A stretch of 63,900 nt of DNA, the filler included, from Octopus bimaculoides (taxonomy: Eukaryota): the NCBI RefSeq assembly GCF_001194135.2. It is 7 parts of 6 records of this genome, joined end to end, with 100 filler letters (N's around TTAATTAATTAA, not from the genome) between each part and the next. Parts side by side here need not be neighbours in the genome. Positions count along the whole stretch, not along the records: positions 17,515 to 26,503 come from NC_068994.1; 6 more parts are not named here. One strand, 5' to 3'. The position numbers and the translations under genes were made by a program. The notes under the pieces are model-generated. The model did not search any database. It worked only from the letters and a program-made list of their open reading frames with translations, and was not told the DNA's origin. Below, one piece after another: positions 17,515 to 26,503 of the stretch (position 1 is its first letter; each line of letters opens with the position of its first letter).

Positions 17515-19053
17515 AGTCTCAATCTTTCTATCTAGTAAAAGATATCTCTGTAAAATATTTCCACATGATTTTATAAACTATTCTGTCATCATCATCATCA
17601 TTTAACATCTGTTTTCCATGTTGGCATGGGTGAGTAAGTTACTTTGACTGATCTCCCCATTTCAGATATGCTCTCCTAGCATGGATCTTTGCATGACCCT
17701 TTGTTGTCTCATAGTTAATTGATATTCTTCCCTCTCCATCGTAGTTCATGTCTCACTTGCATATAAGTGTGCAGCTAGGACATTGCTATTGAAGAGACTG
17801 GCTTGTAGAGGTTTGTCCAGTTTTGTTATCAAGGTAAATACCTTCCATCCTACCTTCATACTCCTTGACATTTCAACATTCATGTCTATGGCACATTTCT
17901 GTTGTATACGCCAACTAGATCTACTCCTTTAGCTCCTCAATTTTTCTGCTTCCCACTTCTATTCAGCATTGTCCTTCATTTTCAGACTGCATGGATTTTG
18001 TTTTCATGGAGTTCATTTTCAGATTGGGTTTTTTTCATATTTTCATGTAGTTCATTTTTTAAAAAATAAAAAAACTATATAAGAGTTTATTTCAATATTT
18101 ATAGACAATATAATGAAATAAAAGGTGAATAGACATACAAACATATATACTATCTGAATTTGTCTTTAATTTATTGAGATCTCTGCTAAAACATATCTTG
18201 CAAAAAAAATGCATCTTTATTGTATTTGCAAGATATTTATTTCCATTATAAAAATATAAAGATATATTATCTTCTGAAGGATATATCAACTTCTCTAGTG
18301 CTTGTGCCATGACAAAATGTACCCAGCACTCTCTGTAAGTAAACCATAAGCTTTATTTATGTTATTTACATTTGACAGATATTTGTCCTCATCTTGTTTC
18401 TGGTTAACACAACGTTTCGGCTGGTATACCCTCCAGCTTTCATCAGGTGTCTTGGGGAAAGAAGGCTGGAGAGTATATCAGCCAAAACATTGTGTTAACA
18501 ACAAAGATGAGGACAAATATCCGTCAAATGTAAATAATGTACATAATTCCTCATCTCTTAAATATAGAACTGTATAAACCATAAGCTGTTAAGAATATAG
18601 ATTTAGAAACCATGGCAAGTGAAGTGTGTTCCCCTGCCTACGTGGAGGAAGGTAGCCACTCCAACTGGTTCCATTAACTTCCTTAGAAAAATACTTGACT
18701 GAACTCTATCAATATATATTTTTAGTTCAACATTGAACTTCTAGCAGTTCTATATTGAAACTATCATGGAATGTCAAGTACTTTGGTCTTTACTGTTCCC
18801 TGGTTTTTCTTTCCTGTCATCCATTTGGCCACCACATCACACCCAAGATGTAACTGTCATCAGAAGAGAAAAGTTGACACATTATAAATAGTTCTGATGA
18901 GTCTAATAGTATATATTTGAAGATGAAAATAATATTTACAAAGTAGTTTTTGCTTTTATGTCATATTTTGTTTTAATTCTACGTAAGCTTTAAATATTTT
19001 TGTTATCTTTTGTAGCAATTTCTCCTGTTAAAGTGTGATGAAGAATTCCAGAC

Positions 19054-20315
19054 ATGACACCATATATTGGTCTACTGTGTCTTCTACATTTACTGATCAC
19101 CCTTGTACTGTCCATAGATATTACATACCATGTCAAGGAAGAAGACAGTCCTCACACCTATATAGGAGACATTGCTGTTGACTCCAACTTATCACACCCT
19201 CTCACACATCAACAACACACTCTCATTACATTTACACAACTACAAAGGACAGTCGAGAGTGGTTCTCACTTATTTAATGTCACCAACTCAGGAAAACTAT
19301 ACACTACTCAAACACTGGATGCTGAGTCTCTGTGTACATACAACAAGGAATGTTCCAGAATAGTTAAAGTAGCAGTGAGGAAAGGAAAGACATTTATGAA
19401 AATATTAAAACTAAAAATATTAATAGAGGATGTCAATGATCATTCACCAGAATTTCCACAAAATGAAGTTGAAATTGAATTTCTAGAAAGAGACACTACA
19501 GGGACAAGAATCTCTCTCCTAAATGCCATTGATGAAGATATTTCAATAAAAAATTCTCAAATTACATATAGAATTAAGAATAGTAAGAGAGAGCCATTTT
19601 CACTCTCTGTTACAAAACACAAGGGCATTTTCATACCTGAATTAATTCTAGAAGATAGATTAGACAGGGAACTCAAAGATTCATATATGTTGACCTTGGA
19701 AGCTAAAGATGGAGGGAACCCTCCCAAAACAGCTACACTCAAGGTACACATATCTGTAACAGATGTCAATGATAACACACCTGTATTTTCACAAGAAGTG
19801 TACAACATCTCTATAACTAACTCACATCAAAGACATTTACCAATTCTTACTTTAAAAGCCACAGATCAAGATTCTGGAGACAATGGAAAGATTTCTTATC
19901 ATTTCAACCATAAAACATCTCGAAAAATCCAGAAGTATTTTGTATTAGATAAGAAAACTGGAGATTTATTTTTACATGATAATTTTCAGTTTCCTAAGAT
20001 GGAGTCTTATAAATTATTTGTAGAAGGAAGAGACGGAGGAAAGCCTCCCAAAAAATCTGTTGCAGCAGTTCAAATTCACATGATTAATAATGAGAATACT
20101 GCTCCATTAATAAATATAGATTTTGTATCTCCTTTAACAGAGANNNNNNNNNNNNNNNNNNNNNNNNNNNNNNNNNNNNNNNNNNNNNNNNNNNNNNNNN
20201 NNNNNNNNNNNNNNNNNNNNNNNNNNNNNNNNNNNNNNNNNNNCTGGAGATGGAACAGACACCAGATGAGTGGAAATTCTCAACAACACAAAGAAGACTT
20301 CCACCTGTTCCTCAG
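19054..20315 (+). CDS. Protocadherin 1, large ectodomain exon (signal peptide, EC1-EC3, start of EC4; 100-N gap at 20144-20243; resumes in cytoplasmic region)
   Basis: Signal peptide MTPYIGLLCLLHLLITLVLS. EC1 DITYHVKEE..YIGDI, LDAESLC and Cys-X5-Cys (CTYNKEC). Cadherin motifs DVNDHSP, AIDED, LDRE, DGGNPP, DVNDNTP, ATDQD. Acceptor ttttgtag| at 19015. After the gap, the frame starting at 20244 reads LEMEQTPDEWKFSTTQRRLPPVPQ and ends at donor CAG|gtaaat (20315/20316); the ORF track picks the wrong frame there. Confidence 0.95.
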
Positions 20316-21899: not shown

Positions 21900-22329
21900 A
21901 TTCTCTTATTTGACGTGTTTGTGTGACACAGACAACATTGCAGTCATTTCCTATTGGATGAGAGAGATTTTCTAGATTTCTTTCAATATTGAAAGTGAGG
22001 CTGATAGCTTTTTTCTTTGTTCATCATACACACAATTGTGTGTGTGTGTGTGGAGGACATAGAGTTGTAACTAGCACACACCAGCATCTGGCTAACATCT
22101 CACCTCCCACTACATACAGCAACTGTCACACTATTATATCAGCAGTTACACAGGAACACCACCACCACTACAACAACAGCAGCAGCAGCAGTAACACAGG
22201 AACACTACTACAACAGCAGTTGTACCACTATAATACCACTTCAGCAGCAGCAGCAGTTAGAGTGGAACACTACAGCAGGATACACATCATCCATCACACA
22301 CAACTACAGTGAAGGATTAAACAATGCAG
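21900..22329 (+). promoter_or_regulatory. Predicted promoter and 5' leader exon of protocadherin 2
   Basis: TGACGT at 21911 and inverted CCAAT (ATTGG) at 21953. About 360 bp with no ATG and CAG/CAA/CAC repeats, ending at consensus donor CAG|GTAAGT (22329/22330). Best partner acceptor is 25494. The TSS is not determinable. Confidence 0.5.
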
Positions 22330-22808
22330 GTAAGTCTCTCTCTCTTTCTCTTTATTATCTTTTCATATTCATTGTAACATTTATATTATATGTGTTTCTA
22401 ATGAAAGACAGGGTAAGGATAATATCTAAAATGTCTGCCATGTTGTATGTTTATACACAGGGACTGGGATAGTGGAGGATCGAGAGTTCTAACCATCACT
22501 GCCACCATTAATAGCAACAAGAACTGCAGTAGTCATTGTATTACAATTACTTCGTACTGGATTATGTCTTTTAATGTTGGAATCACACAAGAGATATTAG
22601 ACTATACATATATTTTATATATAATATTGGTCTAATATAGTCCAAACTAGGTGTATATATATTTATTCAACTGTCAGAAAACATTGATTGAACGCCAGTA
22701 AGACTGGGTGTTAATAATGTATGTCATTATAGTTTATAATAATTCACTTATTAAATCTTAATCTTTGTCTAGTTTGAATAATCTCTAACAGATCACTAAT
22801 ATTAATAT

Positions 22809-22856
<48 letters not shown>

Positions 22857-24924
22857 GTAGAGAGATATATAGATAGATACCCACCCTGTTAAATATCAAT
22901 TATACATTTCTCTGTATGCAAAAAGTGTATTTTGTTATTATTATTGTTGTTATTATTAAGATGTTGATTTATTTAGAATAGTAGAATTGTTATTTAAGAT
23001 ATTTGTTATGAGGTATAAACTGACAATATTGTCCTGTGTTGTTAAAATATATTAACTCTGACAACAATCAATGAATTTTGTAGATTTTTTGAGAATTGGT
23101 CAGAAATAATATCCTCTTTCTGCAAATTAACAGACATCACAAAATTATATTATGTGTAGCAGTATGATATAAAGCTTACAAAATATATCTAAATGGGGGT
23201 TAAATTATCATTATTACACTTAGTAAATAGATCTAAATATTTCAGGGTGATAATTATAGATAAATTTCTATGAACAACCTCTACTGAAATATTTTACAGT
23301 CCCTATTTTTGTACCTTTAAGATATATTGTGAAATATTCAGCATTATTTCATAAATTATTCTGTGTTATCTATACCTCTCTGTCAAATTTTAATAATCCT
23401 TTTTTTTTCAACAAATTAAATATTCCTTGAAGATATTGGATGAATAAGTCTTCTAGATATCCTCTATCAGGTTTGACAACGTCCTCTGATCCAATAACAT
23501 TCTATTTATTGCTTTCAGTATTCTCTAAATGTATTTGTAACACTTTTTAGGATTAGAAAAAAAAATTTTTTTTTTGGCCTAAAATGAAGCAGCTGACAGT
23601 GAGAGAAGTCAATCAGAGTTTGTCATGTTATATTTGTTGAAAAATGTATATTTGTATACATATAACAATTAAAAAATATATAGTTTTTGTTAAATTGGTT
23701 GATAATTCACTGAGATTTTCTGGCCTCCTTCATTAATGATAAGAGACGTTTTGTAATTCTCATTGATAAATTTTACATCTGGTTATCAAAGTTTTCATGG
23801 TTGTTTTCCCCCTCATTTCACTCTGCTGTAGAGATTGTTCTTGACTTTATGAGTTAATTTAATGCCAATTATCCTTTATTAATCAAGAACTTGTAAAGCA
23901 GTCTGTGATATTTTGTTTACTTTCCTTTCACATGCTGGAAAGAGAATGGCACATTGAACTGAAGCAAATATTATAGTCCTGAGAAGAGGAGTTTCATGGT
24001 GCCAACACTCTCTTATGTGATTGATTCTGTTTTAGCTTCAGCTGACAGACCTATTCCTTTGCTCTCACAGTATTTTAAGAGTAGCATGTATTGTCACCAG
24101 GGTTTCTTTCTCCACTTCAATTTTCAATTTATTTAGAACCATTTTGTATAAAACATTCATTACATCAAACCTTTATTTATTGCTCTTTGATGCCATTGTC
24201 ACATTGGAATTCTTTCCCTGATCTCCTTGTTTTTTTTTAATTATGAAAACAATAATGGTGAAAAGTTATTCATAAGTCATTTCCTCTATATGCAATGTCT
24301 TTGTCAAATAATGTGAATGCTCTTTTAGACTACGCTATGCTGATGATGTCTAAGAGACTGAAACATGGAAACAGTTGTCCCTTAATGCAAATATTATGCA
24401 TTCCTTCCCTTGAGCATGTAAATGAACATTGAGAGATGATTTCCGGATTTCTTGAAATGATCTCACTGGTTACATCCCAGTAACTTGACAGTTCAGCAAA
24501 AGAGAATGATAGAATTAGTACTAGACTTACAAAGAATCAGTTCTGGGGTTGGTTTGTTCCACTAAAGGCAGTGCTCTAGCATGGCCAGAGTCAAATGACT
24601 GAAACAAATGAAAGAATATATATGCATACACAGAAATACACGAGAGAGAACAAATGAAAGAAAAGAGCACTCAACACATTGAGTTGGAGTTACATGTCGA
24701 TGTGGTGTGTGTGTGTTGTCTTGTCTCATAAGATACTTGGTGACGTAGCTGGAGCTGGTGCAACATGAAAGGCAACCAGTACTCACTGTATAGTGTTTGG
24801 CAACAAGAAGGGTATCCAGCCATAGAAACAATACCAAGCGATTTGAGTTTAATTCCAAGATATTTAGTATCTCACTTTGGTATTCATCTTTTCTATATTA
24901 GTTTTTAATACATCAGTATGCATG

Positions 24925-25140
24925 ATGGTGGCAAGCTAGCAGATTCGTTGGCAACCTGGACAAAATACTTAGCTGCTTTTCATCTGTCATTACATTCTGT
25001 GTTCAAATACTGCCAAAGTCAGCTCTGCCGTTCATCCTTTCAGTAAAATAAGCACTAGTTGAAGACTGGGGCCAATGTAATAAACTTAACCCCACCCAGG
25101 ATGTTGCTGGCCTTGTGCCAAAATTTGGAACCGTTATTTC
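24925..25140 (+). mobile_element. SINE, third family
   Basis: Homologous to copies at ~2075-2240 and ~40022-40238 (shared gttcaaat..ataag.ac.ag..ggccttgtgc). Confidence 0.7.
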
Positions 25141-25532
25141 AGGATACATATATTTTTTTAAGAAATACATGAATCTGTTCAGAATTTATCGACATTAAAC
25201 CTGAAATGTTTAATTGCTAACTCTGAAAATAGACTGAATTTTCACGGAAAAGCACATTGAAAAATAACTTAAACAAGACGTTTCATATTTCTGATAAAGA
25301 TGGAAGATTTATTCGAGGGAGATAACTCTCGTTATATATTGTCTTAAAGATTGTCAGATCTCAGAAGACTGCACATTTGCAACTAATGGAACACGTTTAG
25401 AGATAGAAATAGAAGTTTCACGCTGATTATTATAAATAGAATTAAGTTTGTTAAATTATACATAAACTTTAAATGTGTTTCTGGTGTTTTGTAGAAATTT
25501 CTCCTGCTAAAGTGTGATGAAGAATTCCAGAC

Positions 25533-26503
25533 ATGACAGCATATATTGGTCTACTGTGTCTTCTACATTTACTGATCACCCTTGTACTGTCCATAGATAT
25601 TACATACCATGTCAAGGAAGAAGACAGTCCTCACACCTATATAGGAGACATTGCTGTTGACTCTAACTTATCACACCCTCTCACACATCAACAACACACT
25701 CTCATTACATTTACACAACTACAAAGGACAGTCGAGAGTGGTTCTCACTTATTTAATGTCACCAACTCAGGAAAACTATACACAACTCAAACACTGGATG
25801 CTGAGTCTCTGTGTACGTACAACNNNNNNNNNNTGCTGAGTCTCTGTGTACATACAACAAGGAATGTTACAGAATAGTTAAAGTAGCTGTGAGAAAGGGA
25901 CAAACGTTTATGAAAATCCTGAAAATAAAAATATTAATATATGACATCAATGACCATTCACCAGAATTTCCACAGAATGAAGTTAAAATTAAATTTTCTG
26001 AGACAGACAGTAAAGGAACTAGAATATCCCTTCTAAATGCAATAGATAAAGATATTTCAATAAAAAATTCTCAACTTACATATATAATTGAAATAAGAAA
26101 GAGTGAACCATTTTCTCTCTCTGTCACAAAACAGGATGGTATTTTCATACCTGAACTCATACTAGAAGAAACATTAGACAGAGAACTACAAGACTCATAT
26201 ATTTTGGCAGTTCAAGCTAAAGATGGAGGGAACCCTCCCAAAACAGCTACACTCAAGGTACACATATCTGTAACAGATGTCAATGATAACATACCTGTAT
26301 TTTCACAGAGACTCTACAACATCTCTATAAATAATTCACATCAAAGACATTTACCAATTCTTACTTTAAAAGCCACAGATCAAGATTCTGGAGACAATGG
26401 AAAGATTTCTTTTCATTTCAACCATAAAACATCTCAAAATATCCAGAAATATTTTGTATTAGATAAGAAAACTGGAGATTTATTTTTACATGATAATTTT
26501 CAG
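25533..26503 (+). CDS. Protocadherin 2, partial ectodomain exon (signal peptide, EC1-EC3), cut by a scaffold spacer
   Basis: Paralog of 19054. Acceptor ttttgtag| at 25494 is 38 nt before the ATG, as in copy 1. A 10-N gap at 25824-25833 has duplicated flanks (tgctgagtctctgtgtac[g/a]tacaac), so the frame break is an assembly overlap rather than a mutation. Confidence 0.93.

What the first reader, a model, noticed from the sequence alone, without database searches (positions are those of the whole stretch)
22324..25536. Splicing creates a uORF whose stop overlaps the protocadherin start codon (AUGA)
Seen: the predicted leader exon has no ATG for ~360 bp, then ACA-ATG-CAG|gtaagt. Joined to the 25495 acceptor it reads ATG CAG AAA TTT CTC CTG CTA AAG TGT GAT GAA GAA TTC CAG ACA TGA (MQKFLLLKCDEEFQT*). 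The TGA (25534-36) overlaps the protocadherin ATG (25533-35). The same 38-nt pre-ATG segment, stop-free in that frame and with the same ATGA overlap, is present in paralog 1 (19016-19057). Known: AUGA stop-start overlaps drive termination-reinitiation in caliciviruses, and overlapping uORFs repress translation. Inference: octopus protocadherins may have translational gating set by leader-exon choice.
Basis: partly seen in the sequence, partly recalled or inferred. Interest (0 to 1): 0.72.

Follow-up and report, generated by a model that had tools for sequence, protein, structure and literature searches.

The report
Spliced uORF in octopus protocadherin leaders
The short upstream reading frame that splicing creates in front of these octopus protocadherin genes is real in the mRNA of five coded octopus organisms, but it is an ordinary upstream ORF confined to one young gene subfamily, with no sign of control by choice of leader exon.

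Summary
Coordinates, donor (22329|gtaagt), acceptor (tag|25495), the 15-codon uORF MQKFLLLKCDEEFQT* and the ATGA overlap with the protocadherin start are all as described. RNA contigs from five coded organisms join ...AAACAATGCAG directly to [A/C]AATTTCTCC.

- Every tandem gene copy has its own near-identical leader exon 3-6 kb upstream. Only one leader type is seen on this acceptor, so "leader-exon choice" has no support.
- The AUGA-terminated uORF is confined to one young subfamily (about 87-89% amino-acid identity across species). More distant paralogs share the leader's 3' motif GGATTWAACA..AG|GT, but about half lack the ATG. Where it is kept, the uORF ends after 3-4 codons or runs far into the coding region.
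- No calicivirus-type TURBS core (UGGGA) and no unusual RNA structure is present.

Two modest signals favour function. The rest of the leader is depleted of ATG (0 against 4.7 expected, P=0.002). Eight of 12 sequence variants are synonymous in the uORF frame (P about 0.0002-0.003).

Most likely this is an ordinary, probably repressive, uORF. It is a new member of a known kind.

The parts
21910..22329 (+). Non-coding leader exon (exon 1) of protocadherin paralog 2. The 5' end is approximate, taken from the earliest RNA contig start.
   Evidence: RNA contigs cover 21910/21936-22329. It is 96-99% identical to leaders in O. vulgaris and O. sinensis.
21958..21975 (+). First small uORF, ATGAGAGAGATTTTCTAG (MREIF*). 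Its stop is not conserved: it reads TAT in O. vulgaris and O. sinensis.
22324..22329 (+). uATG plus CAG, the last 6 nt of the leader exon, in the context aaacaATGc. An in-frame TAA lies at 22318.
   Evidence: seen in spliced contigs
22330..25494 (+). Intron 1 (3165 nt; GT..AG). Its first ~150 nt are as conserved as the exon.
   Evidence: The joint 22329->25496 skips 3166 nt with one letter between. Identity profile.
25495..25532 (+). The 38-nt 5'-UTR part of exon 2, which forms the body of the uORF (codons 3-15).
25517..25660 (+). Second uAUG in exon 2 (gtgATGa), in the third frame. Its 47-codon ORF overlaps the main start.
25533..25536 (+). ATGA: the main start codon (25533-25535) overlapping the uORF stop TGA (25534-25536).
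25533..26503 (+). Protocadherin coding exon: signal peptide MTAYIGLLCLLHLLITLVLS, then cadherin repeats. It is cut by the edge of the piece and by a 10-N gap at 25825-25834.
19016..19057 (+). The same 38-nt segment plus ATGA in paralog 1. Its own leader exon lies upstream of the piece.
   Evidence: RNA contigs join ...AAACAATGCAG to 19016.

Best explanation
This is an ordinary upstream ORF in the spliced 5' leader of one young, gene-converted subfamily of tandemly duplicated octopus protocadherin genes.

Each gene has its own ~420-nt non-coding first exon. That exon ends in ...GGATTAAACAATGCAG and is spliced to a 38-nt untranslated start of the large coding exon.

Shown: the mature mRNA carries a uAUG in a good context (A at -3). 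It opens a 15-codon frame that stops at a UGA sharing two bases with the protocadherin AUG.

Inferred: scanning ribosomes often start at this uAUG. After the short uORF most are lost, and a minority reinitiate at the overlapping AUG. The main ORF is otherwise reached by leaky scanning past this uAUG and past the out-of-frame uAUG at 25517. The net effect is to damp or tune protocadherin protein output.

The AUGA geometry is a by-product of the 38-nt spacing and an A at +4. It is not a dedicated reinitiation device, and it does not depend on any choice among leader exons.
For: - The junction and uORF are seen in RNA contigs of five coded organisms.
- The same leader end and the same open frame occur in all genomic copies of the subfamily in O. 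vulgaris and O. sinensis.
- The rest of the leader is ATG-depleted: 0 observed against 4.66 expected in dinucleotide shuffles, P=0.0024. This fits a leader that is scanned.
- Eight of 12 distinct variants among 10 copies are synonymous in the uORF frame, against 3/11 and 2/11 in the other two frames (P=0.0002-0.003).
- Established knowledge: overlapping or closely abutting uORFs usually act negatively, and the main ORF is reached by leaky scanning (review PMC10275272).
Against: - There is no direct evidence of translation. No ribosome profiling was available.
- The uATG is missing from the homologous leader end in about half of the other paralog lineages (L003, L012, L006b, L010, L007b), and the uORF extent is not conserved in the rest. 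The element is therefore dispensable for the family.
- The leader exon is no better conserved than the first 150 nt of the intron (96-99% for both). Its conservation may reflect DNA-level promoter function or gene conversion (PMC9068888), not the uORF.
- The synonymous-variant test rests on only 12 variants, and 5 of the 8 synonymous ones lie in two Leu codons.
Confidence: 0.6

Rival explanations
1. Neutral passenger. The ATG is simply part of an ancestral leader-end and splice-donor motif (GGATTWAACAATGMAG|GTAAGT). The uORF it opens has no selected role. Its persistence in the subfamily reflects recent duplication and gene conversion.
For: - The motif is shared by distant paralogs, but the ATG is less conserved than its neighbours, and the uORF outcome differs in each lineage.
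- Other protocadherin transcripts carry 4-9 uATGs of no evident pattern.
- The leader and the proximal intron are equally conserved.
- Gene conversion in these arrays is documented (PMC9068888).
Against: - ATG depletion in the remaining 363 nt of this leader (P=0.0024).
- Excess of synonymous variants specific to the uORF frame.
Confidence: 0.25
2. Dedicated hand-over device. The uORF is a translated, peptide-constrained element. It carries ribosomes across the inhibitory out-of-frame uAUG at 25517 and delivers them to the main AUG by termination-reinitiation at AUGA. On this reading it promotes protocadherin translation instead of repressing it.
For: - The AUGA overlap.
- The invariant out-of-frame uAUG 16 nt before the main AUG lies inside the uORF.
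- The uORF is short (15 codons), which favours retention of initiation factors (PMC10275272).
- The synonymous-variant bias.
Against: - No UGGGA/TURBS motif (motif defined in PMC3035654).
- No unusual structure (z=0.33).
- Reinitiation after uORFs normally needs distance to reacquire the ternary complex (PMC10275272).
- The arrangement is absent from other subfamilies.
Confidence: 0.12
3. One reading: different leader exons are chosen and determine whether the uORF is formed, gating translation.
For: None was found. The only variation is that paralogous leaders join to their own paralogous exon 2 (joints 22329->25496 and 22329->25513).
Against: - There is one leader per gene copy in three genomes.
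- All loose ends before the acceptor read the same ...AAACAATGCAG in 11 runs.
- The literature states there are no alternative first exons (PMC9068888).
Confidence: 0.02

Closest known systems
Ordinary eukaryotic uORFs that abut or overlap the main start codon (leaky-scanning or reinitiation control, as reviewed in PMC10275272 and PMC5972666)
   Same: A short (15-codon) AUG-initiated ORF in a capped, spliced 5' leader. It is out of frame with the main ORF and its stop lies at the main start.
   Different: The uATG sits on the last 6 nt of exon 1, so the ORF exists only after splicing. No translation or regulatory data exist for it.
Viral termination-reinitiation at AUGA/UAAUG (calicivirus VP1/VP2, influenza B M1/BM2)
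   Same: A four-base stop/start overlap with out-of-frame ORFs.
   Different: The viral cases follow long ORFs and need a TURBS with a UGGGA core complementary to 18S rRNA helix 26 (PMC3035654). Here the upstream ORF is short and no UGGGA occurs in the spliced leader.
Conserved-peptide uORFs (CPuORFs)
   Same: Variants among copies are biased towards synonymous changes in the uORF frame.
   Different: Conservation is limited to one recently expanded subfamily and closely related species. Distant paralogs have no equivalent peptide.
Vertebrate clustered protocadherin promoter and variable-exon choice
   Same: Tandem arrays of protocadherin units, each preceded by its own conserved promoter-proximal block.
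   Different: In the octopus each unit is a complete gene with its own leader and its own 3' exons. No shared constant exons and no alternative first exons occur (PMC9068888).

Membership tests
uORF in a 5' leader | AUG upstream of the main start in the mature mRNA | tested here: met
   Spliced RNA contigs contain ...AACAATGCAG|[A/C]AATTTC.
uORF in a 5' leader | In-frame stop that defines a short ORF distinct from the main ORF | tested here: met
   15 codons; TGA at 25534-25536; frame +1 relative to the main ORF.
uORF in a 5' leader | Ribosome initiation at the uAUG and an effect on main-ORF output | not testable with these tools
   No ribosome profiling or reporter data.
TURBS-dependent termination-reinitiation | Overlapping or adjacent stop and start (AUGA/UAAUG) | tested here: met
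   ATGA at 25533-25536.
TURBS-dependent termination-reinitiation | Motif 1 (UGGGA core, complementary to 18S rRNA helix 26) within ~40-90 nt upstream | tested here: not met
   No TGGGA anywhere in the spliced 5' UTR. The motif definition is from PMC3035654.
TURBS-dependent termination-reinitiation | Local RNA structure that presents the motif | tested here: not met
   The 166-nt spliced region folds no better than shuffles (z=0.33).
Conserved-peptide uORF | Purifying selection on the encoded peptide | tested here: inconclusive
   8 synonymous against 4 non-synonymous variants, P=0.0002-0.003. Only 12 variants were available, clustered in Leu codons.
Conserved-peptide uORF | Peptide conserved across distant homologues | tested here: not met
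   L003, L004, L006 and L007 have different uORFs or none.
Alternative first-exon (leader) choice | Two or more different first exons spliced to the same downstream exon | tested here: not met
   A single leader end was found at this acceptor in 11 runs. There is one leader per gene copy.

The most novel reading that the evidence does not exclude
The uORF is a translated, peptide-constrained element (MQ[K/Q]FLLLKCDEEFQT). It ferries ribosomes over the invariant out-of-frame uAUG at 25517 and hands them to the protocadherin AUG at the AUGA overlap. This would give the subfamily a reinitiation-dependent, eIF2-sensitive switch on translation in neurons.
Probability: 0.1. Interest if true: 0.6.

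Novelty: new member of a known kind. Interest (0 to 1): 0.3.

Why it matters
Octopus protocadherins are the textbook case of an independent expansion of neuronal recognition molecules, and nothing is published on how their translation is controlled.

This work shows that at least one subfamily has a long, spliced, strongly conserved leader with a defined uORF. That gives a concrete and cheap target for reporter and ribosome-profiling tests. uORFs occur in a large share of animal mRNAs, however, and this one is not family-wide. On present evidence it is an annotation-level detail and not a new mechanism.

Tried and rejected
1. I suspected that in a more divergent O. vulgaris paralog (first gene of L006) the window's uORF frame was the main frame (MKCNEILQ.. 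against ..LKCDEEFQT*). A MAFFT alignment instead pairs main ATG with main ATG, and pairs that paralog's upstream ATG with the window's 25517 uATG. Rejected.

2. TURBS core UGGGA: absent.

3. Special RNA structure round the AUGA: z=0.33.

4. L008 duplicates L002, and L009 added copies but no new variants. The synonymous-variant test could therefore not be enlarged.

5. I looked for the window's exact paralog-2 transcript in organism A. Only near-identical alleles or paralogs were found.

6. Joints from 22052-22196 and 22825-22958 in the read layouts fall in (GT)n, (CAG)n and (AT)n repeats. I treated them as repeat artefacts.

7. Literature searches for a uORF or 5'-UTR description in octopus protocadherins found none.

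8. L005 (O. bimaculoides) yielded no recognisable leader by motif or nhmmer search. Its uORF status is known only for the exon-2 part.

Full report
**What is in the sequence.**
The piece holds two tandem protocadherin genes. Paralog 1 has its large coding exon from 19016 (ATG at 19054). Paralog 2 has a non-coding first exon ending at 22329 and a large coding exon from 25495 (ATG at 25533).

- The leader ends ...aaacaATGCAG|gtaagt, with the uATG at 22324-22326.
- The acceptor is ...ttttgtag|AAATTTC at 25495.
- The joined frame reads MQKFLLLKCDEEFQT*.
- Its TGA (25534-25536) overlaps the main ATG (25533-25535).
- An in-frame TAA at 22318 means the uORF cannot start further upstream.

The protein that follows begins with a signal peptide and the I-x-Y-x-V-x-E-E motif. 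Its best database relatives are protocadherins of O. sinensis (89%) and O. vulgaris (87%). The main ATG is therefore correctly placed.

**Is the junction real?**
Yes.
- In four RNA runs of coded organism A, contigs cover 21910/21936-22329 and continue directly into exon 2, skipping 3166 nt.
- Those contigs begin exon 2 with C and carry paralog-1 letters at 25539 and 25664. Laid on paralog 1 they fit from 19016, with the loose end ...GGATTAAACAATGC(AG) in front.
- They are therefore the mRNA of paralog 1, whose own leader lies upstream of the piece.
- Contigs with the exact paralog-2 reading (...CAATGCAG|AAATTTC) occur in organisms B and D. The C-type occurs in organisms B, C and E.
- A contig in X27 matches the window's leader perfectly over 22242-22329 but starts exon 2 with C. 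The window's precise allele was therefore not recovered in organism A.
- A third paralog shows the same donor joined to AAAGTTCTCCTCTCCAAA+TGTGATG. This has the same length and so the same frame.

**No leader choice.**
- In O. vulgaris (L001, L009) and O. sinensis (L002), every copy of this subfamily has its own leader exon, 3-6 kb upstream of its own coding exon.
- Every contig that reaches the acceptor carries the same leader end in all 11 runs examined.
- The literature describes whole-gene duplication with gene conversion and explicitly no alternative first exons in cephalopod protocadherins (PMC9068888).

**How far is it conserved?**
Within the subfamily, the leader end and an open 13-codon body ending in ACATGA are present in every copy seen.

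The last ~110 nt of the leader are recognisably homologous in much more distant paralogs of about 46-69% amino-acid identity (alignment A2; nhmmer). They end in GGATTWAACA..AG|GTAAGT. The ATG within this motif is kept in some lineages and lost in others:

| Lineage | Leader end | Outcome of the uORF |
|---|---|---|
| L004 | ATGCAG | MQI* |
| L006a | ATGAAG | 56 codons, running out of frame 140 nt past the main ATG |
| L007a | ATGAAG | MKIN*, with a predicted acceptor |
| L003, L012 | AACAGCACAG | no uATG |
| L006b | CAAAATAG | no uATG |
| L010 | CATATAG | no uATG |
| L007b | ATG split by the donor | no uATG in the exon |
| L005 | no leader recognised | the frame before ATGA is closed by TAG and TGA |

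The AUGA-terminated uORF is therefore specific to the subfamily.

**Signals for and against function.**
For:
- The 363 nt between 21961 and 22323 contain no ATG, against 4.66 expected from dinucleotide shuffles (P=0.0024).
- Among 10 copies the 39-nt uORF body shows 12 distinct variants. Eight are synonymous in the uORF frame, against 3 of 11 and 2 of 11 in the other frames (P=0.0002-0.003 depending on the transition bias assumed).

Against:
- The sample is small, and five of the eight synonymous variants lie in two Leu codons.
- Real transcripts of other subfamilies (L003, L004) carry 4-9 uATGs with no depletion.
- The leader exon (96-99% identity between species and paralogs) is no better conserved than the first ~150 nt of the intron (96-97%). 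The orthologous intron is only 66-76% identical where it aligns. The block is therefore constrained or homogenised as DNA, not specifically as a uORF.

- ATG 21958 opens MREIF* inside the transcribed leader. Its stop is not conserved.
- ATG 25517 (gtgATGa) lies inside the uORF body in the third frame. It opens a 47-codon ORF running 125 nt past the main AUG, and it is invariant in all copies. A homologous uATG exists in a more divergent paralog.
- Scanning ribosomes that leak past the leader uAUG therefore meet another decoy 16 nt before the true start.

**Mechanism.**
Shown: the mRNA structure.

Inferred from established scanning rules (PMC10275272):
- The uAUG has A at -3 and should capture a sizeable share of ribosomes.
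- After 15 codons they terminate on the main AUG.
- Reinitiation with no intervening distance is normally inefficient. The viral solution, a TURBS with a UGGGA core (PMC3035654), is absent, and there is no unusual structure (z=0.33).

The most likely net effect is damping of protocadherin synthesis, with the main ORF reached by leaky scanning plus some reinitiation.

A less likely but more interesting reading is that uORF translation shields the 25517 decoy and hands ribosomes to the main AUG.

**Comparison with what is known, and verdict.**
It works like, and is, an ordinary overlapping or abutting uORF. It is not a member of the TURBS class. It is not demonstrably a conserved-peptide uORF. 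It has nothing to do with alternative first-exon choice. No paper in the searched library describes uORFs in cephalopod protocadherins.

It is a new member of a known kind, and interest is modest.

Noticed in passing
window 21900-22490: A ~600-bp block is 96-99% identical between this window and the O. vulgaris and O. sinensis copies. It comprises ~50 bp upstream of the transcript, the whole leader exon and the first ~150 nt of intron 1. The orthologous intron is only 66-76% identical. The untranscribed intronic part is as conserved as the exon, which suggests a promoter-proximal DNA element or a gene-conversion tract.
   Followed up: partly
window 25517-25660: An out-of-frame uAUG (gtgATGa) opens a 47-codon ORF over the main start. 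It is invariant in all subfamily copies and has a homologous uATG in a more divergent paralog.
   Followed up: partly
L001:9975-9990 and the equivalent positions in L002 and L009 (corresponding to window 25512-25517): Most O. vulgaris and O. sinensis copies read GAAATGTGATG where the window has AAAGTGTGATG. This creates an AUG-UGA 'start-stop' in the main frame, inside the uORF body.
   Followed up: no
L003:352-390 and L004:690-725: In real transcripts of another subfamily, an 11-12-codon uORF lying wholly in exon 2 ends 4-8 nt before the main AUG. A 25-codon leader uORF (MLSH..LQGI*) is also shared by both transcripts. Short uORFs ending near the start may be a recurring theme, but this was not tested against chance.
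   Followed up: no
window 22040-22056 and 22165-22260: (GT)n and (CAG/CAC)n microsatellites inside the leader exon differ in length between species and paralogs. These are the only places where the leader varies much.
   Followed up: no
window 18353-18546: A ~195-nt near-perfect hairpin sits in the intron upstream of paralog 1. Its nested inverted repeats have 43-nt arms (91% complementary) and 53-nt arms (81%). It looks like a MITE-type insertion.
   Followed up: partly
window 25798-25861: The 10-N gap at 25825-25834 is flanked on both sides by the same ~27 nt (tgctgagtctctgtgtac[g/a]tacaac). This is an unmerged assembly overlap, so the break in the coding frame there is artificial.
   Followed up: no
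window 22666-22987, 24437-24758, 25081-25241: Three intronic segments, an (AT)n tract and two dispersed repeats, attract RNA contig depths of thousands. The rest of the intron has about 0. This reflects repeats expressed elsewhere, not exons.
   Followed up: no
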